IMG/VR virus record: IMGVR_UViG_3300010885_025649
Coordinates: 1 to 64,000 of that record
Reading direction: 5' to 3' (one strand)
DNA length: 64,000 nucleotides
Of this stretch, positions 18,401 to 45,034 are shown one piece after another. Every line of letters begins with the position of its first letter. Position 1 is the stretch's first letter. Made by a program: the position numbers and the translations under genes. The notes below the pieces were generated by a model. The model worked only from the letters and a program-made list of their open reading frames with translations, was not told where the DNA came from and did no database searches.

Positions 18401-21400
18401 GTTCAAGGTCCTGCAAAGAATCCTACAACTAGTCCATTAAGCACTCCTACTGCTCCATTAGCAGCGCCTATTAGTACTCCTGTAGCACCAGTAGTTAATC
18501 AATTACAGCCGCCAAGTGATGTCACAACAACTCCTTTAACACTAGAAACAACTCCACATACACCAATCACTAATAGAAGATCATACACTTTGGGAGAGCA
18601 TACACAAGGATTAGGAGGTTTAGTACTCGGGGTAGGTTTAGTTGCTACTGCTTGGTCTTTTAGAGAAGCTCAAATGACTAACTTTAAAGACACAGATGCT
18701 GATACAAATCTCTTTATTAGTTCAGCAGGAGTAGCAACACAACTTCTGGGAGGTAAAGCAGGAGTAATTGGTAATACCATTTTAGGTATAGGTATGATTG
18801 GACTACAAGCTAAAGTTGCTGCAGAGAACCAATGGAAGAATCAAGAAGCTAATGCAAATGTAGTAGGAATTGGAAGTAATATATTAGGTAACTTAGCTGG
18901 ATTTACTGCTTTAAGTGCAGTGGCAGAAGGTTTAGGAGGAGTAGCTGGTATAGCTGCAGGAGTGGGAGCAACAACAGGATTAGCAGCAGCAGCCGTCCCA
19001 ATAGCAATTGGTGCAGCAATATTAGGCGGCGCCGCACTTATAGGGGCAACAGCAGAGTGGATTGGAAAAGGAATATATAATAATGTAACCAAACCACAGC
19101 CCGTATCACAGGTCTCAAAACCAGTTACAGTTAGTAATAAATATGTTAATGTGGCCCCTGTATATAAAAATCCAGTTAGTAATAATATACAAGTAGATAA
19201 AACCAATACTGATTATATTAGTGTATATCATTCTAATAGAAGCCCAGTAAGTACAAGAGTGCATTTAGCTAATACTGGTAGTCCACCTATTAGTGATTAT
19301 GTTGGTATGTATCATTCTAATAGAAGTCCTATAAGTAGTAAATTAAGTCTACCTAAACCTGTTCCACATATAGCAGAGTATGTAAGTAAGTACTCGTCTA
19401 GTAGAAGTCCTATTAGTAGTAAACTGCCTTTAACTAAAGTTACTAGTTCACCAATTATCAAATATCAATCTACTAGAAACCCAACCAGTACTAGAATAAA
19501 TCTATCAAATCCTATTAGCAGTTTTATTGATAGACCAGCTCACTTTAATAATCTTAATCCCGCTGAATATGTAAGTAAATATGTATCAAATAGAAGTCCT
19601 ATTAGTACTAAAATTAATCAACACAAAACTAATACTTTAGGTTCAGTTAGTAATACAAAACATATTAATACCAATCCATATTATGCAGTGATTGCTCATG
19701 TAGATGATGATAGAATAAATAGTAATCTTATAGATACAAGACAACTAACATCTTTAAACCAACTTAAGGAAACTTTAGTTAGTATCAAACATAAAGCTAA
19801 TGGACAACATGTAATATTAGATTTAGATACTCATGGTATAGAAGGAAGAGGCTTCGCATTTACAAAAACTGCGCATGGTAAGACTACAGTTAGCGCAATG
19901 TCTGCTAAATATCTTAATAGACAATTGTATGAAGCTGGGTTTAAGAAAGATGACATCACAGTTATTTTAGAAACTTGTAATGCTTATTTCTCTTATAATA
20001 GTTCAAAGAGTGGATTCAAAGCTACTTCAAAAAGTGATATTGAAAAAGCAGAATCTAGAATAAATTCTAGTAAAGCTACAGCTACCTTATTAGACACTAA
20101 TAAAGAAACACCCATAGAGTATAAAATGTATGGGCGCCGGTCAGGTAATTACGAATACTTAGCATTAGCACAATATGTAGGAAATGTAGAATTACAGGGT
20201 CCAGCTAATAGAACAGAGATTGTTGAAGTGCATGGAAATTATAAAGGCTCTGTAGATACCAACTATCCACTGACGTTCCTAAATATACACGATCAAATAA
20301 TCGCAAGTATAAATTCAAACTATATTGAACAATATCCTTCTGGCAGAAGCCCTGTAAGCACAAAGCACAGTAAAAATATATTCCAAAATATCTTTGAGTT
20401 CTTCTTCGGTAAGCCTGTTGCAGCAGATACTTTAAAGGATCCAAGTAATTGGTTAACTAATAGTCAATACACAGCATTAACCAAAACTGCAGGCGCTAGT
20501 AAATTAGAGCAGAGAGTTAATAAGAGTCTACCTGCATTAAATACTAAAGGAACGCCTCTACAAAGTATTCAGAAGAAACCTAATACATTAGACTATATAC
20601 AATCCGCTACTATGAACTTCTTTGATCAGATAAAAGAAGACTTTAATTATATTCTAAATAGAGTTGGTAGTGGTTTAAATAAAATAGGTAATGGAATTGG
20701 CCATGCTATTTCTAATTCAGTAGATGGTATTGGAAAACTATTCGGCAAAAGCTCACAAACCTTTGACCAACAATCCCCAACGTTAATGGCAAATCTTATG
20801 AGAGATTTCAGTCTCACAAAGGAACAAGCCGCGGGAATAGTAGGTAACTTAGGTCATGAGTCTGCGGGGTTACAAGCAGGTATACATCACATTGGATCTA
20901 CAAGCAGTAATGCGGGTATAGGTTGGGCACAATGGGTTGGACCCAGACGTAAAGCCTTTGAGCAATACTTAACTATGACCAATCAAAAGGCTACTGATGC
21001 AAATGCCAATTACGGCTTCTTAAAGCAGGAATTAATGGGGCAATACAGAAGTGCCATTAAAGAAGTCAGAAAGCAATCTACCGTACACAACTCCATGGTT
21101 GTATTCGAGAAGATTTACGAAGGGGCTGGTATAAAGAATTATGCTAGCAGAGAAAGATATGCTAACCGCGCTTTAGCTACATTGGGTAGTATATCTACCA
21201 CAGCAACAGTTAGTAATAATTCAGAAGCACTATTCCCTATAGTTGGGTACAGCTCTTTAACAGCTCCTGTAAGAGGTCAATTTGGTACCCAGAGGCCCGG
21301 GCATGTACACCAAGGTACTGATTATGGTATCCCAGTAGGAACAGGCCTTGTAGCCCCATTAAACGCCACTGTAAGTGAAGCCGGAAGTAATTCCAGTATG

Positions 21401-22201
21401 GGTACTTACATTAGATTAAAAGCATTAGATAATTCCGGTAGAGCTATTAAATATACCTTTATGCACTTATCTCAACTAGATGTACATAAGGGTGAACAAG
21501 TAGTAGCAGGACAGGAAATAGGTAAAAGTGGTAACTCCGGACATAGTACAGGAGCACACGTCCATATAGAAGTACAGCAAGGTAACTTGAATATAGATCC
21601 GGCAGCATATTTTGGTAAGCGCGCTGGAGTAAGTAAAGTAGCACAAGTTGTGCCTAAAGGGGAAACAAAGACTAGTAATAGTAACCAAACCCAAAGTGCT
21701 ATTGATCCTTATACCGGACAGTATAGAGGAGAAGTATATGATGGAAATACTTTAAACAGTATTAAAAGATATGTACCAACCGGTAGAGGCTATAAGTTAG
21801 ATATCCTTAATGGTTCTGAAGTAGTAGTTATAACAGATGCTAATAATAATACACAGCATCAGCATATTAATTTAGATATGAAACCTAAAGTTAATATGAG
21901 TGTAATGTCACCCACTATAGTAAGTCCAGTTAAAGCTACTCCTATAACCCCTACTAAGAAGAATAAAGTAAAGACTACTATTAAAGTAGTAGTTACACCA
22001 ACTTGTTATAAGGAGGAGATGATTAGTAGAGGGCAGATACAATTAGATACAGCTAAATCTCCTACTCCAATAAGTCATAGTGCTAAGGCTGTCATAGTAG
22101 TAAATAAAGATGGAAAGGCCAATCAAGTTATGCATGAAGAAAGAGCCACTGAATTAACAATGGCTCAATGCGGGATCCCCAATTTTCAATACAGAGCTTA
22201 A
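9473..22201 (+). CDS. giant (4242 aa) tape-measure/ejection-type virion protein with PLD-like, multi-TM, putative clan-CD protease, phage lysozyme-2 and M23 peptidase domains
   Basis: HIK at 9788 and LHAN at 10268 in a PLD-fold context. Many Gly/Ala hydrophobic helices. VILDLDTHG...VILETCN. QAAGIVGNLGHES...GWAQW (lysozyme-2 family). HQGTDYG...FMHL...STGAHVH (M23). Confidence 0.8.
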   Translation: MASTNEQLRALGITGEVYNTSSRSSVLFTSRGTSTKAFDRLLTNGNKITNVLQYHINPTGALGGKLVNNATNIYRANDYNSRRHPDSRIKQVPNYIEGPTRDSYTHIKLYGGTKTSMFSTSGAGGGNTQDFGEESEINLNYISPKLNNLERTFVKDYLSGNAKDQYHDKDIALYYQDYKTPGISTEEAKLINAAQKGDTINIGSATLSSNSIVGAALEAALARGAQVNIATTVDGSNTTTTARTLSHYSNLGATVFPTNVDGVILHANFLGIKYKNKPEVSLITSFRASAKAQSTYGETQTNLAIELHGAEASSINKYINSVLFKPGNGQAPSAVGIGNRLAELGNSNYLSALVNMSDAVNVLYTIQADISGDLLTRYYSANQQGLTGRARQIYLTQPIFTGEPVAEQLYYVTRGSAAPSYVKVLDTIRSSPTIYNAINGFVNQAVRPKDETAFGAFAFGFLGGQGGFFKGNENPILSILAAPARGIDNLFRTQRAPFNNGVYGALIAGSIGSITAGVIVRQRFNNNLGFIAGALIGGSIGAAMNQTPSNMFSTPGVKLMALNKANKGDLQDTNAPGPAESLIGNLFNSVQSVGLSALMYGIQSRIAPLVMDYIFQSSATTAALMNNISEDLSKMPPGTSNVSKFFRSIGVFGAKSVGLVNTIGNLNSIRRGIAIGNLGLYGSFARDLFGLDMLVQLNRPIGNATGNYTHGVEVYHKIGAENPGVLIRPGDDFRGKLDPILDKGYNIQLSTVSRDPEILRQYGRGIFRESSSSGLLGRVNKKVIAEALNTILDLNSRIHLKDGTFGLAHTTYGRAFGTVDQELTGDLNTRLNTDIESFIKTHHPTATVLEIAEIKRRIIFGNEVEINGNKVRAPTYQYLTEAGIDNIDRLFGYYRQGMNILGAIYVNPMIFALGNKPKDTSLTIKDLLAAIQEGTSNVFGLPLNLFDNDDKLKALFKSNNDEGPLKYFSSKGKAITQLFLQDASNKSISADLSTNLNTNDREVRSLRGFFGKESSALGEKIALLGAENKLALRGLAGLKLLGMTLPLTLVGLALGDQPGNSLTTATTMLFDQLQNGPSLYGSKLLGGLAKVGGINQDYFTGGVKPALGFSLNPFYLKRAGIATNPNGTPLMYSDGTYQYVDKGRDWKEDLQLTGQLSLEIGGGLLAYNAIKHGVGLATDLADLKAGGTRSLERIIGSRLNRLAGETVLPALALLTFGAVDTAVDSLVQKVSPYGVNYGMSFMLLSGVAGAGIGAVFNKDSGRIKAGAKGAVGGLLLGAVATMIAEFATTLGVDAIRGAAGLISGRPIDDAVMNNTVEGSLRNTYRYALSIGDMAGAIRARAEMQSMGFYIDNSNSRLSHSIATQLGTTPVAQNAISLNIDNSGAVIPTLSFQLPLLGFGVNLESPVKFAFRSNQQLLLARDPDQNYSKVYEGGLVLPQQLGMPNMLGMGLGAIAGIAAKGAFTRFGLPAIVPMALGGLIGGFGFNAYNSLTNKDKPKQGSLSIEYNSGNDLEKLMLGYTAIAPILVSSQLISGAFINTGIGLANSSTNELVQKAGGTLIGLGYKISTNPIVSAARMMGGHANNLVGGQWGLFNNTYGLINRDRGIPVIPLNDKLPGGKIPERSVTHLPAFLVKGIGKTVKYAAAYMLLSNMFDLNKTIPLGNGNTIPTLFSPTAALITGTYASLKYGPRLLPEGSIKEFANIIGGSRSRALTSMFAVIGATALYTLSAQTTNGIPTPRKSVAALNNIASIPFIGNPLAKITDFFYGVSRNASIQDRYTVIPTVFGGIRTGTNTNSLLTGDFGSPIVRKRGGAGLITSDITTALSSGSFSGLLYLGAAQNTTLTITGNQGSSFTKMGNYTLPRNSYVQMIFQGADLSYAYNLLPSGDKAQKQRALARFNVIKNAGPNPKNILKALNTQRPGFSQQDYRTSSPLFSSATLKAVHSELILAALKQRQFVTEYILKNPSEDITSYLDSLGVDKMLNGIGALSKQVILPVRGNFYWNRTAVGGPVGAGPTGHPYFIGGGEVDTSAQLTLQNFNYNSLQTVQNAAANDKALTIFNLGLISLSGLILAGPLLGNLFTNASRRTNIDRYVAEGGGQRSMINIGAYNTERGGNQLLAKVALSGAGDSNLGTLAYLGGLPIYHTDVIPGSYKTAYDNVSKNISELYVGDAQRKLNTIDRNNIASVKEFAELIHGKLTDLRNSMFTGSENITNELNARPDIVAKFDPHRDRNRLAKISELDKVLAGLRADIDSAVDPHRLLEKTLSRREPFRDVSAAGVFKLMGFEVDPGGNTLARMATWFGERIPGAKSIYDFIRPNKLTKAARAEDPLRLHTMSSAESDRILNGLGVKESERIKASIFTDVENQVAGKTALRIMGSTGAGVIGTLQNLAITSMFLDVGDSRRSMVYRENQATTALETTSLFLGTHMATQVLTTGGKAAYELATTGTMNRVGLVAMFANPEVSWLPGLFIAGATMFGPTVLDWMDHMGVPGIKGFKQGVGSNLERAANWADKGLNTNQSVGSTSLGFAALTALTIFTAGGGFIAAGVAGGVVAAANSLANKGTKATPAQQLANTLQAIQNIPGIGPNVIRPIWEKANDLFESTYQTLANQIRGGLQADPKSFWWGVAEGIVEGSSGRNLFEDRTKINSAQSMFLSGYYRGSPLFSVNNRDYKALGYDANYQKFLADTHEQEQSRLNTDTLISTRILHKTVLNGIAYSGDYQDEVFANRLMGGSQGRIFTKGSRAIDNLLMLSITSRAEDTQWVFGSVYNRAVERETIKNSGVAIGAMLLPTLGAMATLGGAGYIASRAAKRGRPPSSGGLTEPEAPKPNLPDPPNQGVLLEERPASQRRVLTQAEQTHDFLIWRNETAEGKIAYKNHGVHARGIYNKLYGVTGHQSSEAYVKPLMGNEAQHDYRLWLQTAEGKAATIEGKGSFDDYFDLFGFKGHQPKPSPQPVIQNKLNPEQYLESAKLAATRPSVQGPAKNPTTSPLSTPTAPLAAPISTPVAPVVNQLQPPSDVTTTPLTLETTPHTPITNRRSYTLGEHTQGLGGLVLGVGLVATAWSFREAQMTNFKDTDADTNLFISSAGVATQLLGGKAGVIGNTILGIGMIGLQAKVAAENQWKNQEANANVVGIGSNILGNLAGFTALSAVAEGLGGVAGIAAGVGATTGLAAAAVPIAIGAAILGGAALIGATAEWIGKGIYNNVTKPQPVSQVSKPVTVSNKYVNVAPVYKNPVSNNIQVDKTNTDYISVYHSNRSPVSTRVHLANTGSPPISDYVGMYHSNRSPISSKLSLPKPVPHIAEYVSKYSSSRSPISSKLPLTKVTSSPIIKYQSTRNPTSTRINLSNPISSFIDRPAHFNNLNPAEYVSKYVSNRSPISTKINQHKTNTLGSVSNTKHINTNPYYAVIAHVDDDRINSNLIDTRQLTSLNQLKETLVSIKHKANGQHVILDLDTHGIEGRGFAFTKTAHGKTTVSAMSAKYLNRQLYEAGFKKDDITVILETCNAYFSYNSSKSGFKATSKSDIEKAESRINSSKATATLLDTNKETPIEYKMYGRRSGNYEYLALAQYVGNVELQGPANRTEIVEVHGNYKGSVDTNYPLTFLNIHDQIIASINSNYIEQYPSGRSPVSTKHSKNIFQNIFEFFFGKPVAADTLKDPSNWLTNSQYTALTKTAGASKLEQRVNKSLPALNTKGTPLQSIQKKPNTLDYIQSATMNFFDQIKEDFNYILNRVGSGLNKIGNGIGHAISNSVDGIGKLFGKSSQTFDQQSPTLMANLMRDFSLTKEQAAGIVGNLGHESAGLQAGIHHIGSTSSNAGIGWAQWVGPRRKAFEQYLTMTNQKATDANANYGFLKQELMGQYRSAIKEVRKQSTVHNSMVVFEKIYEGAGIKNYASRERYANRALATLGSISTTATVSNNSEALFPIVGYSSLTAPVRGQFGTQRPGHVHQGTDYGIPVGTGLVAPLNATVSEAGSNSSMGTYIRLKALDNSGRAIKYTFMHLSQLDVHKGEQVVAGQEIGKSGNSGHSTGAHVHIEVQQGNLNIDPAAYFGKRAGVSKVAQVVPKGETKTSNSNQTQSAIDPYTGQYRGEVYDGNTLNSIKRYVPTGRGYKLDILNGSEVVVITDANNNTQHQHINLDMKPKVNMSVMSPTIVSPVKATPITPTKKNKVKTTIKVVVTPTCYKEEMISRGQIQLDTAKSPTPISHSAKAVIVVNKDGKANQVMHEERATELTMAQCGIPNFQYRA
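19226..20365 (+). repeat. six copies of an 11-aa repeat Y-x-S-x-R-[SN]-P-[IVT]-S-[ST]-[KR] inside the giant protein
   Basis: In-frame copies start at 19226, 19310, 19391, 19463, 19580 and 20333. Confidence 0.9.
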
Positions 22202-28570: not shown

Positions 28571-31372
28571 TTACCCCTCACATCCACAACTATCCACGGG
28601 TAGCGATGTATCCACAGTTAAAACCGGAGCTGAGTCACCCACATCAATCATTTGTCTTGCTGCCACTCTAGTAGCACTATCAGCATCTGCTGCAGATTCT
28701 CCATAAGTATAATAGATGGTAGCTAAGCCTCTATCATATGCAGCCATGTGAGTATTATGAATTTGCTGACCAGAATAAGCTCCGGTATTCTTATCTTTAC
28801 TAAAGAATAGATCTACTGATTGCCCTTGATCTAACCATTCTTGTCTCTTTGCAGCTTGATTAATAATAGCAATAGGATTAATTTCCCAAGGAGTCTTAAA
28901 GACTTCTTTCTCTAAATCACTTAATTGATGGATATGTTGGATACTTCCACCACCACCATTATCTAATAGACTATTAAGTAATGATTGTGAGTAAATTCCT
29001 TTAGCTTTTAGTAATTGTATTAATACAGGGTTCTTAACTATAAACGCGCCTTTAGCACTAAAGTCAGCATAGTAATTACCTATTGGTTGAATACCATAAC
29101 TAACTTGTCCACTAATAATTGCATTAGTTCTTGTAGGAGCAATAGCTAATAAACTACCATTACGTCTACCAGTACCTTTAAGCCATTCAGGTTCCCCATA
29201 CTCTTTAGCTAAATCCTTAGTAGCTATATCAGCATTCTGTCTAATAAACTTCATGATGTTATTAGTATAGCCAACTGCAGCAGGGGATTCAAAGGGGACT
29301 AACTTCTGTTGTAAGAATGTATGCCAGCCTAGAATTCCTAATCCTAGTGCTCTTGATTTAACCGCGCCAAGATAAACTCTTTCAAATCCGGGTAGATCTT
29401 TAGCAAGTTCCAGCCATTCTTCCATAACGGCATCCAGGAACCAAATTGCTAATTGAACTACAGTGGGATCATCTTTCCATTCATCATACTTAGCTACATT
29501 TAGAGAACTTAATACACATACGTAAGAGTGTTTATCATCATTAGGCAGGATTATTTCCGTACAGTTAGAACTAAGTAATCCAATAGATAAAGCAAACATG
29601 TGTGTTGTATTTACAGTAGTACAATACACATCTTGTTTATCTTCTAGTAATTCTACAGCTTTAACTTTATTAAATTTGCACTTAGCATTATATCCTGTAA
29701 GATCTCTAAAAGAAACTAATCTAGTAAAGGTTACAAGCTTCGCTAATTTTCTAGCTGCAACAGATGAAATAGTTAATCTCCAAGAGTCTTTACATAAATA
29801 CTCACCATACCCATCATTAAAATCTTTAAGGCCCTCTTTATTAGCAACACTAATAGTAGAATTAACTCCTAAAGTTTTAAGAAGAGTTTGTAAATCATAT
29901 AGAAAACTCTTATGAATTGAACCAAGTTGATAACCATAACTTCCTGAGGATTGCATTGCACAACCATCAGCATCAAATAAGCCAGCAATAAACTCACATT
30001 TACTTACCAGATCCCACTCAAAGACTTCTTGCGGCAACTTAACTTTGTTAGTAGTAGTCCAAGGATATAACTCATCTTTCCTAGCAGAAAGCCCTTGCAT
30101 ATTCTTTCTATTATCAGTAGAGGTTTTAAACCCTAATTCATCTATTTGATTAGTGACAGATTGTTTAGGTTTTATTTCTTCTGCAGAATCAATAAGTCTT
30201 TGCATGCAACTATATTTAGTATCATATAACCATAGCAAAGGTCTATCATCAATATGAGTCCCATCCCCACACAAGAAGCCTTTTATATAAGCTCCTTCTG
30301 TAGTTTTATTGCCATGACTTTCTTGAGTATGGCTTAGTAATTTAGTTCCAACTTTAATATCTTTAGCTAGTATCTTAGTACCATCTTCCAAAAAGAACCC
30401 ATGATCTAAAGTACAATCAACATATGAATTATCAGCTAAAGTAATTCGCATTACTTCTACATTCTGTTCAATAAGTTTAAATTGATCATTAGTTACCCAA
30501 CTATTACCATCAAAGATTGTCACAGTTTTATTAACTAAATCCTTAATAGGAAAACTACCTAAAGAGGTTGTAACTTTAGTATCTCCTGTCAAACACAGGT
30601 TAGTATTATTAAACCTTAATCCTGCATCTTTATACCATTGAGGTAGAATCCTATTAGCATTACCACTAAAAGTCTTATAAGGTTGAGAGAATTGTACACT
30701 AGTAGTTAAAGTCTTAAGCCATAAACTAACTGCTTCAGAATCACTATTCTTAACTCTCTGCATAAATTCATCAGTGAATAATGCAGAGTGATTTAGATTA
30801 CCACAGAAGGTACTAATATCCCCTTTAGGCTGTCTAATATTAAGGAACTGTAAGTAATCACCATGTTCAACATTTAAGGTAGCCTGATAAGCGCCACGTC
30901 TAACAGATCCTTGAGAGCAAGCATAAGTAGTACTATCAGCAATCTTTAACCAAGGAATAACTCCACCAGAGGTACCATTAATACCACCTCTAATAGGAGT
31001 ACCTGCAGGTCTAACTCCAGACCAATCATACCCAACAGCACCGCCGCCTTTAGTTAAAGCCGCGAATTCATTAAAGCTATCAAAGATACTACCCGGACCA
31101 TTAAGGGTATCACCTACAACAGAACCGTAGCATGACGCTGGCAAGCCTCTATTAGTACCAAAGTTAGTTAATACTGGAGTAGCAGGACAGAGCCAACCCA
31201 TCCACAGTATATGAAATATCTTCTCTTCTAATTCTGGCTTCTTTAATCTTTTAGCGGCGGTAGCGGCTAGTCTTCTATACATATCACGGGGAGTTTCCCC
31301 CTTCATTAAATAACCATTATTTAATACTTGAGAGCCATCCCGGGTTAACCACACGGGTGAAGTTTGAATCAT
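28571..31372 (-). CDS. nrdA: class I ribonucleotide reductase alpha subunit (no ATP cone), intein-containing; mature about 589 aa
   Basis: PATPVLTN, PASC, GSVRRGA, TNL|CTEI, LGLG, AIAPT, DQGQS, IYY, C-terminal CGCEG. Confidence 0.95.
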   Translation of the reverse strand: MIQTSPVWLTRDGSQVLNNGYLMKGETPRDMYRRLAATAAKRLKKPELEEKIFHILWMGWLCPATPVLTNFGTNRGLPASCYGSVVGDTLNGPGSIFDSFNEFAALTKGGGAVGYDWSGVRPAGTPIRGGINGTSGGVIPWLKIADSTTYACSQGSVRRGAYQATLNVEHGDYLQFLNIRQPKGDISTFCGNLNHSALFTDEFMQRVKNSDSEAVSLWLKTLTTSVQFSQPYKTFSGNANRILPQWYKDAGLRFNNTNLCLTGDTKVTTSLGSFPIKDLVNKTVTIFDGNSWVTNDQFKLIEQNVEVMRITLADNSYVDCTLDHGFFLEDGTKILAKDIKVGTKLLSHTQESHGNKTTEGAYIKGFLCGDGTHIDDRPLLWLYDTKYSCMQRLIDSAEEIKPKQSVTNQIDELGFKTSTDNRKNMQGLSARKDELYPWTTTNKVKLPQEVFEWDLVSKCEFIAGLFDADGCAMQSSGSYGYQLGSIHKSFLYDLQTLLKTLGVNSTISVANKEGLKDFNDGYGEYLCKDSWRLTISSVAARKLAKLVTFTRLVSFRDLTGYNAKCKFNKVKAVELLEDKQDVYCTTVNTTHMFALSIGLLSSNCTEIILPNDDKHSYVCVLSSLNVAKYDEWKDDPTVVQLAIWFLDAVMEEWLELAKDLPGFERVYLGAVKSRALGLGILGWHTFLQQKLVPFESPAAVGYTNNIMKFIRQNADIATKDLAKEYGEPEWLKGTGRRNGSLLAIAPTRTNAIISGQVSYGIQPIGNYYADFSAKGAFIVKNPVLIQLLKAKGIYSQSLLNSLLDNGGGGSIQHIHQLSDLEKEVFKTPWEINPIAIINQAAKRQEWLDQGQSVDLFFSKDKNTGAYSGQQIHNTHMAAYDRGLATIYYTYGESAADADSATRVAARQMIDVGDSAPVLTVDTSLPVDSCGCEG
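29564..30595 (-). mobile_element. intein (344 aa) with LAGLIDADG endonuclease in NrdA
   Basis: Starts CLTGDTKV and ends LSSN before the catalytic Cys (NL|...|CTE). Block B TLDH; motifs GFLCGDG and FIAGLFDADG. Confidence 0.93.
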
Positions 31373-31386
31373 ATCTTATTCTATCC

Positions 31387-34215
31387 TTATATAATAATAT
31401 CTGAGAAATCAATAGTACTTTTATTATAAACAGTATTTCTATTAGCAAAAGAATCTTGCATTTGATTACTGGCTGTAAGAACACTAAACCAATCTAAAGT
31501 ATGGGGTTTAAGATTTCTCCAATTAGTTTTGAGGCCAAGATCTCCCAATTTAGTATTAGCTCTATGTCTAATATATAATTTAATATCTTCTGCAGTAATA
31601 CCTCTAGCATTTCCTAATTTAAATGCTTCATCAATAAAAGCATCTTCATAAGTAACAATATCTCTAGCAGCTTGATAAATAGTAGCTTTTAATTCATCTG
31701 TCCATAAATGAGGATTCTCTTGAATATACTGTCTAAATAACCAACAGCCAGCTTCTGAGTGTAAAGAGTTACCAGAAATACAAACATTATTATTTCTTCT
31801 GACTACTAAAGCGCCTGTAGGTACTGCTACACAATAGACCATACCCTTATATTCTTCCAATGATTTAGTAATAGAAGAGCCAGGAATAGAAGTACCTCTA
31901 TTAATATAGATGTAATAGTCATCAACTTTAGTACGAGAAACATTAGTATAATAACCACCCAAAACAGCTATAGCTTGTAGAGTATTTATATTAATAGGAC
32001 ATGATGTTGTATAAATAACAGAATTATCTGTAGCTAAGCAAGCTGTCCATTGTGCGACATGATAAATAAAATCCACACACCATTCAGAAGTTACTGTAGA
32101 ATAATCAATCCAATTATACCGGTTAGAGAAATCATGTCCTTGGGGAACAGTAATAACAAAGGTTGTAAATAAAGATAGATCAGACTTATTAGTTTTAGAA
32201 TATTTATAAGGAAAAGAATCTAAGAATTCAGTAAGCTTAGCTTTACGTTGAGGATTATCTATACTAATAGTAATAGTAGTTTCATCAATAGTAGTTCTAA
32301 AACACCCAAGTAATACTCTAAGTTGTTCTATTAAAGTTAATTTACTTTTAGTTTTATCCTTAGCATTAGCATATCCAGCCGTAGGTAATGCATTATCTTT
32401 AGAATAATTAGCGCTACTAGCATATTCAAACTTATAACCATTACCACCTTTACCATTAATTAACATTCTATGATTTGGGGTAACAGATAAATTCATAGCA
32501 CCTCTAGTAGACTTGAAGTTATACAACTCTCCATCTACTTCATAACTCATTAATTTAGTAGGCTTAACAAAACTAATCAGTTTACTGCTGGGATTATATT
32601 GTGCAATATTTGTGGTTAAATCAACATCTTTAAGTAATTGCCACCCCGCAGGAGTAAGAACTTCTGTATCATCAGAATAGCATTCATCTTTAATAGAAGC
32701 TGTAATAATTTTACCAACACTTTTCAGCAAATTAAATCTACTAAAGTTTAACAAGATCGCAAATGAGCTAAACAAGCTAACCCCTTCAGTAAAAGCACTA
32801 AAGACTGCCAAAGATGTAGCAACATCTCTTTCATGTAGTAAGTTATTTATCTTAGCACTTAAGACTTTATTAGACAAGAATTCTGTATAAATACTATCTG
32901 GTAAGTTCAAAGAATCATTTAAGTATGAATAGCTCTTTACATGGATAGAATTACCTGTAATAGCAACTCTACCTTCTCTCCTAGAAACTATATTCTCTGT
33001 TGGAACAGAAACACAATACACTTTGCCATTATAATTAACTAATTCTCTATGAGGATATGTTCTAGTTGAGCGGTCAGATATACTTAACACATAACAAACC
33101 TTTGCAGTCTTAGGATGTCCACCTTGCGGTAAATTAACACTTAAAGCAGCTTCTTCATCTCTATTTACACCAATACAGGTTGTTTTACCAGCTAATACTC
33201 CAACTGCTTGTAGTTTATTTACCGCTTCAAAGTTAGTCGAGTAATAATAATGTCCTACTGATCCATCCCATAAAAGAGCTTCTTCTAAGACTTCACAGGC
33301 TTTTTGTTGGCTCATAGATTCTAAATCTAAGAACCCTAAGTTTTTGATATTCTTAATATCGATATCATCAGGAATAGAAAAGCTGATTGTTTGGCGATTA
33401 GCTCCACAACGTTCTTTATCATGTACATAATAAGCTATACCAGCTTCGTCAAGTAAAGATTTAATTCTAGTAATCTTTCGATCTTTAGTAAGATCGAGAT
33501 CACATCTTCTCCAATCTCTACCTTCAGCACTAGGACAATTACCTCTTAAGCAGCCATCAGCTTGAGCAGCTATTAAAATTCTTTCTAAGACAGATAAAGA
33601 ACCAGAAGCACCAACACCCTTACCAGAAGTTGGATAGCTATAATTATTTCCCAAAGTAGATTTATCCGACTTCCTCTTAGTAACCTTTTTACTAGCGGGG
33701 TGAATTGTAATTAAATCATGATTAGGAGTCACACATATATTAGTAGAATTTGTTTTATATAAGTGCATTACACCTTCATAATCATATGACATTATTTGTG
33801 TAGGCAGCACAAAAGTAATATGCTGACTTAATAAATCATACTGAGCAACCTTATCATATTCAGTTAAGTCTTTACAAAACTTCCAACCATTACTAGTTAA
33901 CAATTCTGTTTGATTATCAAAGCATTCAAAATCAGCAAATGCATTTGCCATCATAGCAATTTCAGGGTGAGGAAACCACAAAGGTACTTTAGACCAGTAT
34001 TCTTTCTGAACTTCTATTTCAGTTTGTGTAAAAAGCTTTAATATAACTGTAACAATATTTCGTTCGGCGGGGGTTAAGTTAGTATTAAAATCCTGCAAAT
34101 CCCCTTGCATACCAAACTCTGTCCATAACCAATGAGACAAATGCTGAGTAAGAAAATACTCCTCAGCTTTAGGATATAAAATTGGACGATAGTTAGTTCT
34201 ACCTTCTATTAACAT
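31387..34215 (-). CDS. nrdB: class I ribonucleotide reductase beta subunit with two inteins; mature about 312 aa
   Basis: FTQTE, FE|SIHVKSY, FTEGVSLFSSF, KDE|SLH, after removing two inteins. Confidence 0.93.
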   Translation of the reverse strand: MLIEGRTNYRPILYPKAEEYFLTQHLSHWLWTEFGMQGDLQDFNTNLTPAERNIVTVILKLFTQTEIEVQKEYWSKVPLWFPHPEIAMMANAFADFECFDNQTELLTSNGWKFCKDLTEYDKVAQYDLLSQHITFVLPTQIMSYDYEGVMHLYKTNSTNICVTPNHDLITIHPASKKVTKRKSDKSTLGNNYSYPTSGKGVGASGSLSVLERILIAAQADGCLRGNCPSAEGRDWRRCDLDLTKDRKITRIKSLLDEAGIAYYVHDKERCGANRQTISFSIPDDIDIKNIKNLGFLDLESMSQQKACEVLEEALLWDGSVGHYYYSTNFEAVNKLQAVGVLAGKTTCIGVNRDEEAALSVNLPQGGHPKTAKVCYVLSISDRSTRTYPHRELVNYNGKVYCVSVPTENIVSRREGRVAITGNSIHVKSYSYLNDSLNLPDSIYTEFLSNKVLSAKINNLLHERDVATSLAVFSAFTEGVSLFSSFAILLNFSRFNLLKSVGKIITASIKDECYSDDTEVLTPAGWQLLKDVDLTTNIAQYNPSSKLISFVKPTKLMSYEVDGELYNFKSTRGAMNLSVTPNHRMLINGKGGNGYKFEYASSANYSKDNALPTAGYANAKDKTKSKLTLIEQLRVLLGCFRTTIDETTITISIDNPQRKAKLTEFLDSFPYKYSKTNKSDLSLFTTFVITVPQGHDFSNRYNWIDYSTVTSEWCVDFIYHVAQWTACLATDNSVIYTTSCPININTLQAIAVLGGYYTNVSRTKVDDYYIYINRGTSIPGSSITKSLEEYKGMVYCVAVPTGALVVRRNNNVCISGNSLHSEAGCWLFRQYIQENPHLWTDELKATIYQAARDIVTYEDAFIDEAFKLGNARGITAEDIKLYIRHRANTKLGDLGLKTNWRNLKPHTLDWFSVLTASNQMQDSFANRNTVYNKSTIDFSDIII
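31768..32682 (-). mobile_element. NrdB intein 2 (305 aa) in the second ExxH motif
   Basis: CYSDDTEVLT..GW, VTPNH, VYCVAVPT, ends ISGN|S; endonuclease motifs decayed. Confidence 0.92.
32950..33924 (-). mobile_element. NrdB intein 1 (325 aa) in the first ExxH motif
   Basis: CFDNQTELLT..GW, VTPNH, VYCVSVPT, ends ITGN|S; degenerate LAGLIDADG motifs AAQADG and LLWDG. Confidence 0.92.
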
Positions 34216-34253
34216 ATTTGTACCATTAACATATTTATTTAGATTAACATAAC

Positions 34254-34586
34254 TTAGTGGTTAATTCTGGCTAACCATAATTGATCTCTTATTTCATGAA
34301 TTAAAGTTATCCAATTATAATCAATATCTTCTTTAGAGAAACTATAAAGCTTAAGTAATCTAGAATTAGTAATAAACATTTCTAGATTTAAATAAGCATC
34401 TAATTCTTTTAGTAGTTGAATATAATTATATAGGATAATATTTTTATCTAAAGTATTTAAGAGATATCCTTTATAAACTCTAGCTCTAAGTTCTATTTCA
34501 GTAAGAAATATTAATTGCTCTTCCGTAAGATCATATTTTAGATTAATCTGTTGAATTTCCAGAAGTAAAGATTCTAGCATATTCAT
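34254..34586 (-). CDS. hypothetical protein
   Basis: 110 aa, overlaps the uvrD-like stop. Confidence 0.55.
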   Translation of the reverse strand: MNMLESLLLEIQQINLKYDLTEEQLIFLTEIELRARVYKGYLLNTLDKNIILYNYIQLLKELDAYLNLEMFITNSRLLKLYSFSKEDIDYNWITLIHEIRDQLWLARINH

Positions 34587-36357
34587 CCTCTATTTGACTA
34601 TTACCAAATTCTATATAAAGTTTTCCCAAGGCCAAATAATCTTTAGCTCTAGTAACTGCAACATATTGTAATCTCAATTCTTCTTCATTATATTTACTAG
34701 TAGGAAATCTTCCCTCTCCCAAATCCCAAAGTAATACAGCAGAATATTCTCTACCTTTTTGTTTATGAATAGTAGAAACTAATACATCTCCTTCTTTAGG
34801 CTGGCTTTTAGCTTTAGATCCTAATTGATTAATAGTAGTTAAAGCAGAATACCAATCAGAATAACCATCTAGGAATTCAACTAAAGCATTCAGATATTGT
34901 TTAGTTTTAGAATATGCAGCAGGATCTTCTGCGTATTTAGACTGCCAATACTGTTCTAATTTAGGAAGATATCTATTAACAGATTCCAAAGGTTCTTCAG
35001 ATAATATTTGACATTGCTCTGATTTAATTTCTTTAAAAAGAGTAGTAAGGAGAGCACGTTTAGAATTACTAGTAACCGCAGCTAAATCATATTTAGTAGG
35101 CCGACCTTCAGTAGCATTCCAAATAGTAGATGCTAAAGTATTCCCTATAAATTGTTTCTGATTAACTAAATAAGACCACGGCCGTAAAGAAGGATTAATA
35201 ATAAATTCAGGGATTGCAATTATATCTAAAACAGCAGGGCTGGAAAAGAAAGAGCCCTCATAAATATAATAAGAGACCTTATTATTATTCAACCAAAGTT
35301 CCAATTCAGGTAAAGATTTAATACTTCTATATAAAATCATTGTTTGAACTTCATTATTAATCTTATCCATTAACCAAGGATAGATTTGTCCTAATCCAAT
35401 ACAGTAATCTATTTTAGGATTAAAGTTATCAGTTCTACCTTTAATTAGAAATTCCTCTGAGCCTAATTTAGTTAGTAGGCCGTTAGCTAAAGCAAGAATA
35501 TTATCAGTACTTCTATAATTATATCTAAGGGGGAGTAATTTAAACTCATTACTATTAGTAAGATTATCTAAGAATTGTGTGGTAGCATAATTCCAACCAT
35601 AAATCAACTGATGTTTATCTCCAACAGCAAACATAGATATTAAAGCACTTTGATATTTAATAGCAATAGTACTCATAAATTGATTTAGGTCTTGTGCTTC
35701 ATCAATAAGAAGATACTTATAGGTATCTGTAACAAAACAGTGTTCTGGCAATTGAGAAGCTAAGTTTAGAATATCAGTATAGGTTACATGTCCCGTAGCT
35801 AACATTTGCTCATTAATTATAGCAAGTGCTTTAGTAATTATAATTGGAGATACTTTAGATAAACTTTTATATTGACTAAGGAACATAGAGAATTTACTAC
35901 CGGACATAATACATTGTTGTCTAAGGCCATAAATTGCTCTAATCTGTTTATCATCAAGAGCTAAAGTATTAAGCCAGTGTTTATATTGTGGCAGGATATC
36001 TTTATAGAAACTATCCATAACCTTAATAGCTTCTTGTATATTCAGAAGTTTATAAAACTTAGATACTAAAGTAAGTGCAACAGAGTGAAAAGTCTTTACT
36101 GTAATCAGTTTAGATTCTTCAGATGTAAACAAAGTTGTATCTTGTTTCTTTTCATTTAATTCAACTTGGACTGCACTATTAAAAGCCAGGATTAAAATCT
36201 TAGCGGGATTTTGCAACAAGATACTTTTGGCTCTAGCCAATAAGACAGTTGTTTTACTACAACCCGCTAAACCATTAACAACAATATTCTGATCATGAGA
36301 TTGATTAATAATATCAATCTGATCTGCATTCAACTGTAAGTTACCAAATATATCCAC
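34543..36357 (-). CDS. uvrD: UvrD/Rep SF1 helicase
   Basis: GLAGCSKTT, TFHS, IDEAQD, VGDKHQLIYGW, NYRS, STIHKQKGRE, YVAVTRAK. Confidence 0.9.
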   Translation of the reverse strand: MDIFGNLQLNADQIDIINQSHDQNIVVNGLAGCSKTTVLLARAKSILLQNPAKILILAFNSAVQVELNEKKQDTTLFTSEESKLITVKTFHSVALTLVSKFYKLLNIQEAIKVMDSFYKDILPQYKHWLNTLALDDKQIRAIYGLRQQCIMSGSKFSMFLSQYKSLSKVSPIIITKALAIINEQMLATGHVTYTDILNLASQLPEHCFVTDTYKYLLIDEAQDLNQFMSTIAIKYQSALISMFAVGDKHQLIYGWNYATTQFLDNLTNSNEFKLLPLRYNYRSTDNILALANGLLTKLGSEEFLIKGRTDNFNPKIDYCIGLGQIYPWLMDKINNEVQTMILYRSIKSLPELELWLNNNKVSYYIYEGSFFSSPAVLDIIAIPEFIINPSLRPWSYLVNQKQFIGNTLASTIWNATEGRPTKYDLAAVTSNSKRALLTTLFKEIKSEQCQILSEEPLESVNRYLPKLEQYWQSKYAEDPAAYSKTKQYLNALVEFLDGYSDWYSALTTINQLGSKAKSQPKEGDVLVSTIHKQKGREYSAVLLWDLGEGRFPTSKYNEEELRLQYVAVTRAKDYLALGKLYIEFGNSQIEDEYARIFTSGNSTD

Positions 36358-44298: not shown

Positions 44299-45034
44299 CT
44301 AGCTCCTTTAATAATATAATATCTTGAATTTGAAACCAGCGCGCACTAAGTGGTGGTGGATTGGAGATATAATCTTGCTCTAACTTACCATTATCTAACC
44401 AAATATCTCTATGTGTAAAGGTTTCATATAAATATGGATTAGCAGAACAGATACATTTATGTCCTTTAGTAGAAGTGAATACTTCATTACGAGCAATAGC
44501 CGAAGTATTGAAAGCTTCTAATTGAGGAACTAGATATTTCATAGCTCTCAAAGCTTGGTTACCCGCGATTAAAATAGGAACTATAGGTAAAGCATTTAAC
44601 TCACTTTGTAACCAGCGGCCACATTGTTGTATATACTCAGCAGTAACTTTATTATCTCCTGGTTTACATTTAATAGCATTAGTATAATAACCTAAATGAT
44701 CTGTACTACTAATTACTTGATCTATATAATCTTTATATTTATTAGATTGTGTGAAAGTGCCACCTTTAGTTCCTCTATAAAAGGAATATAAAGTGCGAAG
44801 CTCTTTAGCTTTCTCTGGATACCAAATCCCAAAGATAACTCGGCGGATATAACCGCCGGTAACTCCAACTAGAGAAGCTCCTTGACCCACTTCTTGAGAC
44901 CCGGGATAATCAGAGATAATTATAAATTTGGGATTTCTATAATTACCTGAACTCGGTGTAGGAATGGCAGCTAAAGAGCAAGTACCAGTTGGATTACCGG
45001 TACAATTACATAAATCATTTAACACATTAATCAT
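44276..45034 (-). CDS. uracil-DNA glycosylase family 4-like protein
   Basis: N-terminal Cys cluster, IISDYPG..E...G..LVG..G, TNAIKCKP, C..WL..E. Confidence 0.8.
   Translation of the reverse strand: MINVLNDLCNCTGNPTGTCSLAAIPTPSSGNYRNPKFIIISDYPGSQEVGQGASLVGVTGGYIRRVIFGIWYPEKAKELRTLYSFYRGTKGGTFTQSNKYKDYIDQVISSTDHLGYYTNAIKCKPGDNKVTAEYIQQCGRWLQSELNALPIVPILIAGNQALRAMKYLVPQLEAFNTSAIARNEVFTSTKGHKCICSANPYLYETFTHRDIWLDNGKLEQDYISNPPPLSARWFQIQDIILLKELVDGNTIK

What the first reader, a model, noticed from the sequence alone, without database searches (positions are those of the whole stretch)
31387..34215. NrdB carries two related inteins, one in each pseudo-symmetric ExxH metal-binding motif
Seen: intein 1 (33924..32950) interrupts FE|SIH and intein 2 (32682..31768) interrupts DE|SLH. 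Each sits between the Glu and the +1 Ser of one of the two ExxH ligand motifs. The inteins resemble each other (C-x-x-x-x-TE-x-LT-x-x-GW, AQY, VTPNH, YxGxVYCVxVPT, ending GN without the penultimate His). Intein 1 keeps recognisable LAGLIDADG-like motifs (AAQADG, LLWDG); intein 2 has lost the acidic residues (LLGCF, AQWTA). Inference: one intein lineage colonised the structurally equivalent second site of the same fold, either by ectopic homing to a similar target or by two invasions. About two-thirds of the precursor is intein, and no metal site forms until both have spliced.
Basis: partly seen in the sequence, partly recalled or inferred. Interest (0 to 1): 0.8.

Follow-up and report, generated by a model that had tools for sequence, protein, structure and literature searches.

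The report
Phage NrdB with two inteins
A freshwater phage's ribonucleotide reductase small-subunit gene is interrupted by two self-splicing inteins, one in each metal-binding ExxH motif; this is real, but both insertion sites and the intein family are already known, and the double arrangement recurs in public metagenomes.

Summary
ORF 31387..34215(-) encodes a 942-aa NrdB precursor. Intein 1 (325 aa, 33924..32950) splits FADFE|SIH. Intein 2 (305 aa, 32682..31768) splits IKDE|SLH. The deduced 312-aa extein aligns without gaps to intein-free NrdBs.

Both inteins are HINT + LAGLIDADG proteins (AF2 pLDDT 96 and 94). They are related to each other (E=2e-25). They belong to the family of the Aquifex aeolicus R2 intein and the AceL NrdHF intein.

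They are not copies of one another. Intein 1 sits inside a tight site-1 clade (up to 58% identity). Intein 2 is a divergent site-2-type intein. So there were two separate invasions.

Intein 1 keeps 60 of 61 family-conserved columns. Intein 2 keeps its splicing residues, but only 7 of about 21 conserved endonuclease columns, and both catalytic Asp are lost.

Inteins at both R2 metal-ligand regions are published (PMC8772380, PMC7891396). Double occupancy occurs in at least 8 other protein clusters, including GenBank DAS76287.1, and arose at least 5 times independently.

Verdict: a new member of a known kind. The one less ordinary point is that Cys1 occurs together with a near-invariant block-F Cys, the nucleophile of class 3 inteins.

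The parts
31387..34215 (-). nrdB ORF: 942-aa precursor of a class I RNR beta subunit (class Id-like), stop codon included
33925..34215 (-). N-extein (aa 1-97). Contains ligand 1 (FTQTE) and ends with the Glu of the first ExxH motif
32950..33924 (-). Intein 1 (325 aa), site-1 type: C1, T66/H69 (TPNH), block-F C304, T323-G324-N325, +1 Ser
33070..33612 (-). Intein 1 LAGLIDADG endonuclease domain (about intein aa 105-285). Catalytic D123 (33556..33558) and D220 (33265..33267) are kept; 19 of 20 family-conserved columns are kept
32683..32949 (-). Middle extein (aa 423-511): SIH..SY (His ligand, Tyr), FTEGV (Glu ligand), ending in the Glu of the second ExxH motif
31768..32682 (-). Intein 2 (305 aa), divergent site-2 type: C1, T68/H71/M73 (TPNHRM), block-F C284, S303-G304-N305, +1 Ser
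31897..32361 (-). Intein 2 degenerate LAGLIDADG domain (about intein aa 108-262). F128 (32299..32301) and T213 (32044..32046) replace the catalytic Asp; only 7 of about 21 conserved columns are kept
31387..31767 (-). C-extein (aa 817-942 plus stop), starting SLH (His ligand)
28571..31372 (-). nrdA, 15 nt downstream in the same operon. Class Id-like alpha subunit (589-aa extein) carrying a third, unrelated intein
29564..30595 (-). NrdA intein (344 aa, LAGLIDADG_3), inserted NTNL|C...SSN|CTEI. The +1 residue is the Cys of the NxCxE motif

Best explanation
This is the nrdB gene of a large freshwater phage. It has been invaded twice by homing inteins of one widespread phage intein family. The family signature is C-[FY]-x-x-x-T-E-[LIV]-L-T ... 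TPNH ... VYCV.VP ... GN, and its known members are the Aquifex aeolicus R2 intein and the AceL NrdHF intein.

Each intein belongs to its own site-specific lineage. Intein 1 is a typical member of the lineage that homes to GAA|[TCN] of the first ExxH motif. Intein 2 is an old, diverged member of the lineage that homes to the second ExxH motif.

The precursor is translated as one 942-aa chain. Each HINT domain then excises itself and ligates its flanks (Cys1 thioester, transfer to Ser+1, cyclisation of the terminal Asn). This restores E-S-I-H and E-S-L-H and yields a 312-aa beta subunit with a complete dimetal site and Tyr.

Intein 1 still has an apparently active LAGLIDADG endonuclease and can probably home into empty site-1 alleles in co-infecting phages. 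Intein 2 has lost both catalytic Asp and most conserved endonuclease residues, but keeps every splicing residue. That is the expected late stage of the homing cycle: selection keeps only splicing, because the host gene needs it.

Shown here: anatomy, family membership, fold, the conservation pattern, and the separate ancestry of the two inteins. Inferred: actual splicing, endonuclease activity, and the order of arrival.
For: - Junctions and a gap-free extein.
- HINT + LAGLIDADG fold: AF2 pLDDT 96.1 and 94.1. Foldseek hits TliVMA, PI-PfuI, PI-SceI, I-DmoI and AceL NrdHF at E 1e-13 to 1e-5.
- Family kinship: the site-2 profile hits 6zgq (AceL NrdHF) at E=1e-15. The Aquifex R2 intein sequence in PMC8772380 Fig. 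S4 shows the same motifs: GTEVLT, VAQYD, LIVLQADG, WDG, KVYCVSVP, AGN|CH.
- Site-specific lineages: 58 site-1 and 33 site-2 or site-2+1 inteins were found. Trees are, HMM scores, discriminating columns.
- Conservation: intein 1 keeps 60 of 61 conserved columns. Intein 2 keeps 21 of 23 columns counted as HINT, and the two misses are columns where it has a gap. It keeps 7 of 21 HEN columns. Its HEN identity to the family consensus is 0.35, the lowest of 32, while its HINT identity is 0.72 against a median of 0.77.
- Sporadic distribution on the extein tree (24 changes for site 1, 16 for site 2) fits mobile elements.
- Family members splice experimentally: Aquifex R2 (PMC8772380) and AceL NrdHF (PMC7891396).
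Against: - No experiment shows that either intein splices here.
- Intein 2 sits on a long branch (1.15-1.19 changes per site), and no well-supported clade holds it.
- The AU test does not reject an intein 1 + intein 2 sister pair (p=0.19).
- The role of the near-invariant block-F Cys is unknown, so the textbook class 1 pathway is assumed, not shown.
- No close relative of this phage was found, so the order and age of the two invasions cannot be dated.
Confidence: 0.8

Rival explanations
1. Intragenic spread: intein 2 arose in this phage lineage from intein 1 (or the reverse) by ectopic homing into the similar GAA|TCT..CA target of the other ExxH motif, and then decayed.
For: The two target sites share a GAATCT core and 13 of 24 central bases, among the best in-frame matches in the gene. 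The AU test does not reject an intein 1 + intein 2 sister pair (p=0.19). Cross-site jumps did occur elsewhere: site-2-type inteins sit at site 1 in P0083, P0116, phage phiTE and Vibrio phage C-ZP2022, and the two inteins of P0116 pair together.
Against: Intein 2 scores 69 bits higher on the site-2 HMM than on the site-1 HMM. Intein 1 ranks only 35th of 58 site-1 inteins as its partner. Intein 2 carries no site-1-specific states, 0 of 7. It starts CYSDDTEVLT, ends SGN and has the WIDxxxVTxEW..FI endonuclease motif of the site-2 consensus. The sister constraint costs 37 lnL.
Confidence: 0.05
2. One or both inserts no longer splice, most plausibly the decayed intein 2. The gene would then be a dead or dying nrdB rather than a working precursor.
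For: Intein 2 is the most diverged member of its family (237 bits on the site-2 HMM, against 314-426 for the other site-2-site inteins scored), and its endonuclease domain is clearly degenerate. Pseudogenised inteins are documented (PMC3196547, title and abstract seen).
Against: The 2829-nt reading frame is intact. Intein 2 keeps all 8 invariant columns of its family alignment (six in the splicing domain: C1, L9, T10, G13, H71, G304, N305 among them) plus T68 and C284. Its HINT identity is in the normal range. The AF2 model of the HINT part is confident. All extein ligand residues are intact. The adjacent nrdA is intact too.
Confidence: 0.07
3. The inteins are retained because they help. They would act as post-translational gates or chaperones for assembly of the dimetal cofactor, or as redox-sensitive switches through Cys1 and the block-F Cys, not merely as selfish elements.
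For: For Aquifex R2, the intein-containing construct gave higher Fe occupancy and twice the activity (PMC8772380). Inteins of this family cluster on ligand residues at six or more distinct points in NrdB. Cys1 and the block-F Cys are both near-invariant.
Against: Presence and absence are patchy on the extein tree, and many close NrdB homologs have no intein. The same family sits in many unrelated phage proteins. Clustering at conserved active-site codons is what homing endonuclease target choice predicts. Nothing here tests conditional splicing.
Confidence: 0.08

Closest known systems
Aquifex aeolicus R2 (NrdB) intein, 346 aa (Rehling et al. 2022, PMC8772380)
   Same: Same host protein and same intein family: C1, GTEVLT, VAQYD, LIVLQADG / WDG LAGLIDADG motifs, KVYCVSVP block F, terminal GN without a penultimate His. 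It splits the second ExxH ligand motif and splices in E. coli.
   Different: It is inserted one residue later (E-L|C-H rather than E|S-L-H), with Cys at +1. The host is a bacterial class Ia-type R2 carrying a single intein with intact LAGLIDADG motifs.
AceL NrdHF split intein (PDB 6zgq; PMC7891396)
   Same: The insertion point is identical to that of intein 2 (SIRDE|SMHVE against SIKDE|SLHSE). It comes from a phage-like metagenomic contig. The N-part is homologous (site-2 profile E=1e-15) and PNHRM is identical. The block-F Cys and T-x-N end align, and it lacks the same two His residues.
   Different: AceL is naturally split with a GIY-YIG gene in between. It has Ala1 and is a proven class 3 intein. 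The window's inteins are contiguous, carry LAGLIDADG domains and keep Cys1.
Single R2 inteins of cultured phages: Pectobacterium phiTE, Vibrio C-ZP2022, Tenacibaculum PTm1, Pseudanabaena PA-SR01
   Same: Same intein superfamily at the same two ligand regions. phiTE and C-ZP2022 carry theirs at E|TIH (site 1). PTm1 and PA-SR01 carry theirs at DEx|CH (site 2+1).
   Different: Each carries one intein only. All four are site-2-type by HMM. No member of the site-1-type clade (CFD..TELLT..TGN) and no double-occupied NrdB was seen among the best-ranked hits in the 50,697 phage records (only four of 255 matching records were opened).
Metagenomic double-occupied NrdBs: P0002, P0003, P0018, P0116, P0311, P0243, P0256; P0114 = GenBank DAS76287.1 (Caudoviricetes sp.)
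   Same: Inteins of the same family sit in both ExxH regions of one NrdB.
   Different: They share 28-40% identity with the window protein and sit at separate places on the extein tree. P0114, P0115 and P0133 use DEx|CH for the second intein. P0003 has a third intein. P0243 and P0256 each have one mini-intein.

Membership tests
Intein (HINT protein-splicing domain) | In-frame insertion in a conserved host protein, whose removal restores a gap-free match to intein-free homologs | tested here: met
Intein (HINT protein-splicing domain) | Block A nucleophile (Cys1), block B TxxH, C-terminal Asn, and a +1 Ser/Thr/Cys | tested here: met
   Intein 1: C1, T66, H69, N325, S+1. Intein 2: C1, T68, H71, N305, S+1
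Intein (HINT protein-splicing domain) | HINT fold | tested here: met
   AF2 pLDDT 96 and 94. Foldseek hits to TliVMA, PI-SceI, AceL NrdHF and hedgehog Hint
Intein (HINT protein-splicing domain) | Actual excision and extein ligation | not testable with these tools
   Needs expression of the precursor. Related members splice (PMC8772380, PMC7891396)
LAGLIDADG homing endonuclease (double-motif, intein-borne) | Two alpha-beta-beta-alpha-beta-beta-alpha half-domains with LAGLIDADG helices | tested here: met
   Both models hit PI-PfuI, PI-SceI and I-DmoI. Helices end at residues 123 and 220 (intein 1) and 127 and 213 (intein 2). Pfam LAGLIDADG models themselves did not hit
LAGLIDADG homing endonuclease (double-motif, intein-borne) | Acidic residue at the end of each LAGLIDADG helix | tested here: met
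   Intein 1 only: D123 and D220, conserved in at least 90% of 54 site-1 inteins
LAGLIDADG homing endonuclease (double-motif, intein-borne) | Acidic residue at the end of each LAGLIDADG helix (intein 2) | tested here: not met
   F128 and T213 stand where 94% of the family has Asp. 14 of about 21 conserved HEN columns are changed
Class 3 inteins | No Cys/Ser/Thr nucleophile at intein position 1 | tested here: not met
   Cys1 in both inteins, and in 207 of 207 sampled family members
Class 3 inteins | Cys at block F position 4 (branch nucleophile) | tested here: met
   C304 and C284 lie in VYCV and align with the C124A position of 6zgq. That alignment stretch is weak on its own. Cys occupies this column in 192 of 207 family members
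Class 3 inteins | Trp at B:12 and Thr at G:5 (WCT triplet) | tested here: not met
   B:12 is L71 (intein 1) and M73 (intein 2). G:5 is T323 (intein 1) and S303 (intein 2). AceL NrdHF itself is an MCT variant
Site-1-type NrdB intein lineage (CFD..TELLT...TGN at E|xxH of motif 1) | Same insertion point, and membership of the clade by tree and HMM | tested here: met
   Intein 1: clade support 100; 452 bits against 234 bits; 7 of 7 diagnostic states
Site-2-type NrdB intein lineage (Aquifex R2 / AceL NrdHF kin) | Same insertion point, and a better fit to the site-2 profile than to the site-1 profile | tested here: met
   Intein 2: 237 bits against 168 bits; nearest neighbours are site-2 inteins; 3 of 7 site-2 states and 0 of 7 site-1 states. 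It sits on a long branch with no supported clade
Class I RNR beta subunit (NrdB, ferritin-like dimetal-carboxylate) | E/D + ExxH + E + ExxH ligand set and the radical-site Tyr | tested here: met
   FTQTE, E97-S-I-H100, Y104, FTE152GV and E186-S-L-H189 in the deduced extein; PF00268 E=8e-41. NrdA's best PDB matches are 6dqw and 6dqx, which I recall as class Id alpha subunits

The most novel reading that the evidence does not exclude
The intein family seen here combines an invariant Cys1 with a near-invariant block-F Cys and a penultimate Gly. It also includes, at the very same NrdB site, a proven class 3 intein (AceL NrdHF) that has lost Cys1. The least ordinary reading still open is that these inteins, including the two in this NrdB, use the block-F Cys as a working nucleophile or redox partner. 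That would make them a class 1 / class 3 hybrid or relay, possibly disulfide-gated. The family would then be the evolutionary bridge by which a second, independent class 3 lineage arose. The double insertion would act as a redox- or metal-sensitive gate on assembly of the RNR cofactor.
Probability: 0.15. Interest if true: 0.6.

Novelty: new member of a known kind. Interest (0 to 1): 0.3.

Why it matters
It adds one well-resolved case to a published pattern: mobile inteins and introns in R2 genes pile up on the metal-ligand and radical-site codons (PMC8772380).

One gene shows two stages of the homing cycle side by side. One intein has an intact endonuclease. The other has kept only what the host needs, the splicing domain.

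The survey made here may be useful to intein specialists. It found at least six distinct insertion points of one intein family around the NrdB ligands, repeated independent double occupancy, and site-2-type inteins sitting at site 1. This gives a natural system for studying how a LAGLIDADG intein retargets between two pseudo-symmetric sites.

The Cys1 + block-F Cys signature links a class 1-looking family to a proven class 3 intein, and it is cheap to test by mutagenesis.

None of this changes what is known about RNR or about inteins in general.

Tried and rejected
- Megablast of the gene against 50,697 phage records found nothing. tblastn found only distant relatives, at most 31% identity.
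- Pfam alone was weak. Intein_splicing scored below its cut-off for intein 1 and gave no hit for intein 2. No LAGLIDADG model hit either intein. The fold had to be shown by AF2 and Foldseek.
- phmmer of intein 1 against PDB sequences found nothing.
- Deep branching of the intein superfamily is unresolved. FastTree and the IQ-TREE quick search disagree on what is sister to the site-1 clade. The AU tests reject neither the intein 1 + intein 2 pair (p=0.19) nor a single ExxH-site clade (p=0.79). I therefore relied on HMM scores, partner rank and diagnostic columns.
- Only 7 strictly diagnostic columns separate the site-1 and site-2 types, so that test is thin.
- GC and GC3 give no usable signal for the age of either intein.
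- Read laying was uninformative about intein-free alleles. The only run holding the sequence is kept as contigs and may be the source sample.
- Tori & Perler 2011 and Brace et al. 2010, on class 3 inteins that retain an N-terminal nucleophile, are not in the library. What I say about them is from memory.
- I considered that the NrdA intein might belong to the same family. It does not.
Full report
**What is in the sequence.** The minus-strand ORF 31387..34215 encodes 942 aa. Translation puts a 325-aa insert at aa 98-422 (nt 33924..32950) and a 305-aa insert at aa 512-816 (nt 32682..31768). Removing both leaves 312 aa.

Pfam's Ribonuc_red_sm matches the precursor in three stretches (E=8e-41). 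Solved R2 structures (9dws, 8dq3, 6cwo) match in three pieces that break at aa 98/423 and 512/817.

Aligned with 15 intein-free NrdBs found later, the deduced extein runs across both junctions without a gap. The conserved features are FTQxE, F..xE|xIH...Y, FTEGV and S[IV][RK]DE|SxHSE. Intein 1 therefore sits between the Glu and the next residue of the first ExxH motif, and intein 2 at the same position of the second. Inteins make up 66.9% of the precursor.

An independent Logan assembly of a freshwater metagenome run holds 31000..34600 in one contig with one SNP. That run may be the source sample.

**Context.** The window is phage DNA. It encodes a terminase large subunit, tail-fibre-like proteins, a DnaB-type helicase and an RNA ligase. 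It also encodes a primase, RNase HII, a UvrD helicase and a 4242-aa protein with tail-lysozyme and M23 domains. The same NrdB protein is on a 212-kb contig.

nrdA follows nrdB after 15 nt. Its 589-aa extein best matches 6dqw and 6dqx, which I recall as the class Id alpha subunits. The cofactor may therefore be dimanganese rather than di-iron. NrdA carries a third intein (aa 260-603, nt 30595..29564) before the Cys of its NxCxE motif. That intein does not belong to the NrdB intein family.

**What the inserts are.** The two inserts are homologous to each other over their whole length (BLASTP E=2e-25, 24% identity). AlphaFold2 models built on family alignments are confident (pLDDT 96.1 and 94.1). 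Both models match intein-endonucleases (TliVMA, PI-PfuI, PI-SceI) at E 1e-13 to 1e-9, I-DmoI for the middle domain, and the AceL NrdHF intein for the splicing domain. Both are therefore HINT + LAGLIDADG inteins.

The splicing residues are present in both: Cys1, TPNH in block B, terminal Asn and +1 Ser.

**Family and relatives.** Two searches of 5.8 billion proteins and one exhaustive HMMER search of 1.84 billion cluster representatives found a large family. I delimited inteins with N- and C-terminal HMMs.

Among 215 hits there were 58 inteins at E|[STC]xH of the first motif. They start CFD..TELLT and end TGN; I call this 'site-1 type'. There were 26 at the same point of the second motif, starting CYSDDTEILT and ending SGN ('site-2 type'). 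Seven more lie one residue later (DEx|CH).

Other inteins of the same superfamily sit before ligand 1 (FTQ|SD) and after the first His (ExxH|T). About 100 lie in unrelated phage proteins: NAPRT, PolA, ThyX, NrdA, NrdD, MCM, GTP cyclohydrolase I and helicases.

**The literature already knows this family in R2.** The Aquifex aeolicus R2 intein is 346 aa and of LAGLIDADG type. It lies between L229 and C230 inside E228-x-x-H231, and it splices in E. coli. The same paper states that inteins and introns of R2 genes lie mainly at the two metal-ligand regions and the radical Tyr, and it names Pectobacterium, Corynebacterium, Pseudanabaena and Tenacibaculum phages (PMC8772380). The sequence printed in its Fig. 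S4 shows the family motifs, including KVYCVSVP and AGN|CH.

The AceL NrdHF split intein has the flanks SIRDE|SMHVE, which is the site of intein 2 (PMC7891396). The site-2 profile hits its structure 6zgq at E=1e-15.

I checked four cultured phages directly. phiTE and Vibrio C-ZP2022 carry their intein at E|TIHSRSY. Tenacibaculum PTm1 and Pseudanabaena PA-SR01 carry theirs at DEx|CH.

**Are the two inteins copies of each other?** No.
- Intein 1 lies in a site-1 clade with support 100 in both FastTree and IQ-TREE. It is up to 58% identical to other members.
- Intein 2 sits on a long branch (1.15-1.19). Its nearest neighbours are site-2 and site-2+1 inteins.
- Intein 1 scores 452 bits on the site-1 HMM and 234 on the site-2 HMM. 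Intein 2 scores 237 on site-2 and 168 on site-1.
- Among 58 site-1 inteins, intein 1 ranks only 35th as a partner of intein 2.
- At 7 columns that separate the types, intein 1 has 7 site-1 states. Intein 2 has 0 site-1 states and 3 site-2 states.
- The one caveat is the AU test. Forcing the two together costs 37.4 lnL but is not rejected (p=0.19).

I conclude that there were two separate invasions from allelic donors.

**Did one lineage colonise both sites, at family level?** This is possible and partly shown. A tree that holds all ExxH-site inteins as one clade is 25.9 lnL better than the tree found by the free quick search (p-AU 0.79). Deep branches are short and the two tree methods disagree, so this is not proof.

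More directly, site-2-type inteins sit at site 1 in P0083 and P0116, and in phages phiTE and C-ZP2022. In P0116 the site-1 intein pairs with the site-2 intein of the same protein. Cross-site colonisation therefore has happened, in other genomes.

The two target DNAs in the window share GAATCT and 13 of the 24 central bases. The in-frame mean is 7.6, and two other windows also reach 13.

**State of the two inteins.** Of the columns conserved in at least 85% of family members, intein 1 keeps 60 of 61.

Intein 2 keeps 21 of the 23 counted as splicing-domain columns; the two misses are columns where it has a gap. It keeps only 7 of 21 endonuclease columns. The changes include D128F, G129R, E208H and D213T. 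Its endonuclease identity to the family consensus is 0.35, the lowest of 32 (median 0.79). Its HINT identity is 0.72 (median 0.77).

Intein 1 thus looks mobile. Intein 2 looks like a resident that has lost homing but must still splice.

**How common is double occupancy?** In the first sample of 97 intein-bearing NrdBs, 5 have site 1 + site 2, 3 have site 1 + site 2+1, and 1 has site 1 + pre-ligand-1. The five site-1 + site-2 cases need five separate origins on the extein tree.

Among the top 150 representatives at 50% identity, the script's own labels give 5 site-1 + site-2 and 1 site-1 + site-2+1. By inspecting flanks I count about ten with inteins in both ExxH regions, including two with tandem inteins 2 aa apart. 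One cluster is in GenBank as DAS76287.1 from Caudoviricetes sp. contigs of 140-148 kb.

I saw none among the best-ranked cultured-phage hits, though I opened only four of the 255 matching records.

**Mechanism.** The default is class 1 splicing: Cys1, then Ser+1, then Asn cyclisation. The penultimate residue is Gly in place of the usual His, as in the Aquifex intein, which does splice.

One feature is not textbook. In 207 sampled family members Cys1 is invariant, and the block-F position is Cys in 192 and Ser in 13. That position aligns with the C124A site of 6zgq, although the alignment stretch is weak on its own. C124 is the essential class 3 branch nucleophile of AceL NrdHF. The AceL paper does not mention the Aquifex intein or discuss the ancestry of its intein.

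Whether the block-F Cys here acts as a nucleophile, a general base in place of the usual Asp, or a redox partner of Cys1 cannot be decided from sequence.

The Aquifex study argues that metal may load before splicing.

**Verdict.** This is a real and cleanly delimited double-intein NrdB. It is a new member of a known kind. It is of modest interest as a natural example of two homing-cycle stages in one gene, and as an entry point to a Cys1 + block-F Cys intein family.

Noticed in passing
window 29564..30595 (-), inside nrdA 28571..31372: A third intein (344 aa, Pfam LAGLIDADG_3 + Intein_splicing) is inserted NTNL|C...SSN|CTEI, so the +1 residue is the Cys of the NxCxE motif of NrdA. It is not of the NrdB intein family, yet it also has a Cys in its block F (VYCTTV) and lacks the penultimate His.
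   Followed up: partly
207 inteins extracted from P0001-P0215 (scripts): The superfamily signature is Cys1 207/207, His B:10 207/207, block-F Cys 192/207 (Ser 13), penultimate Gly 199/207. The block-F Cys aligns with the class 3 nucleophile C124 of AceL NrdHF, so the family is neither textbook class 1 nor class 3.
   Followed up: partly
P0083:117-438, P0116:115-437; L003 (Pectobacterium phage phiTE) and L002 (Vibrio phage C-ZP2022) NrdB inteins: These inteins sit at site 1 (first ExxH) but are site-2-type by HMM score (for example 335 against 195 bits). This is direct evidence that the lineage has switched between the two pseudo-symmetric sites. In P0116 the two inteins of one protein pair together on the tree.
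   Followed up: partly
P0240 (1294 aa), P0251 (814 aa), P0302, P0328, P0336, P0347: There is a further insertion point two residues before the first ExxH (AE|SExRH). In P0240 and P0251 two inteins lie in tandem, only 2 aa apart, in the same motif. Other points are FTQ|SD before ligand 1 and ExxH|T after the first His. NrdB ligand codons are a dense intein hot-spot.
   Followed up: no
window 9473..22201 (+): A 4242-aa ORF whose only Pfam matches are a phage tail lysozyme domain (aa 3773-3902) and an M23 peptidase domain (aa 3945-4043) near the C-terminus. It is probably a giant tail or tape-measure-like lytic protein.
   Followed up: no
window 45031..46275 (-): A free-standing HNH endonuclease ORF (PHROG 1314, E=1e-24) lies in the replication module. 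With it, this phage region carries at least four homing-type elements.
   Followed up: no
window 32899: The Logan contig of the freshwater metagenome run differs from the window by a single T>G in the middle extein. There are no other differences and no intein-free joint across 31000..34600.
   Followed up: yes
extein aa 62-66 (window about 34018..34032): The first metal ligand is Glu (FTQTE), as in all the close intein-free homologs aligned. NrdA best matches 6dqw and 6dqx, which I recall as class Id alpha subunits. The enzyme is probably a class Id-like (dimanganese) RNR rather than an iron-tyrosyl class Ia.
   Followed up: partly
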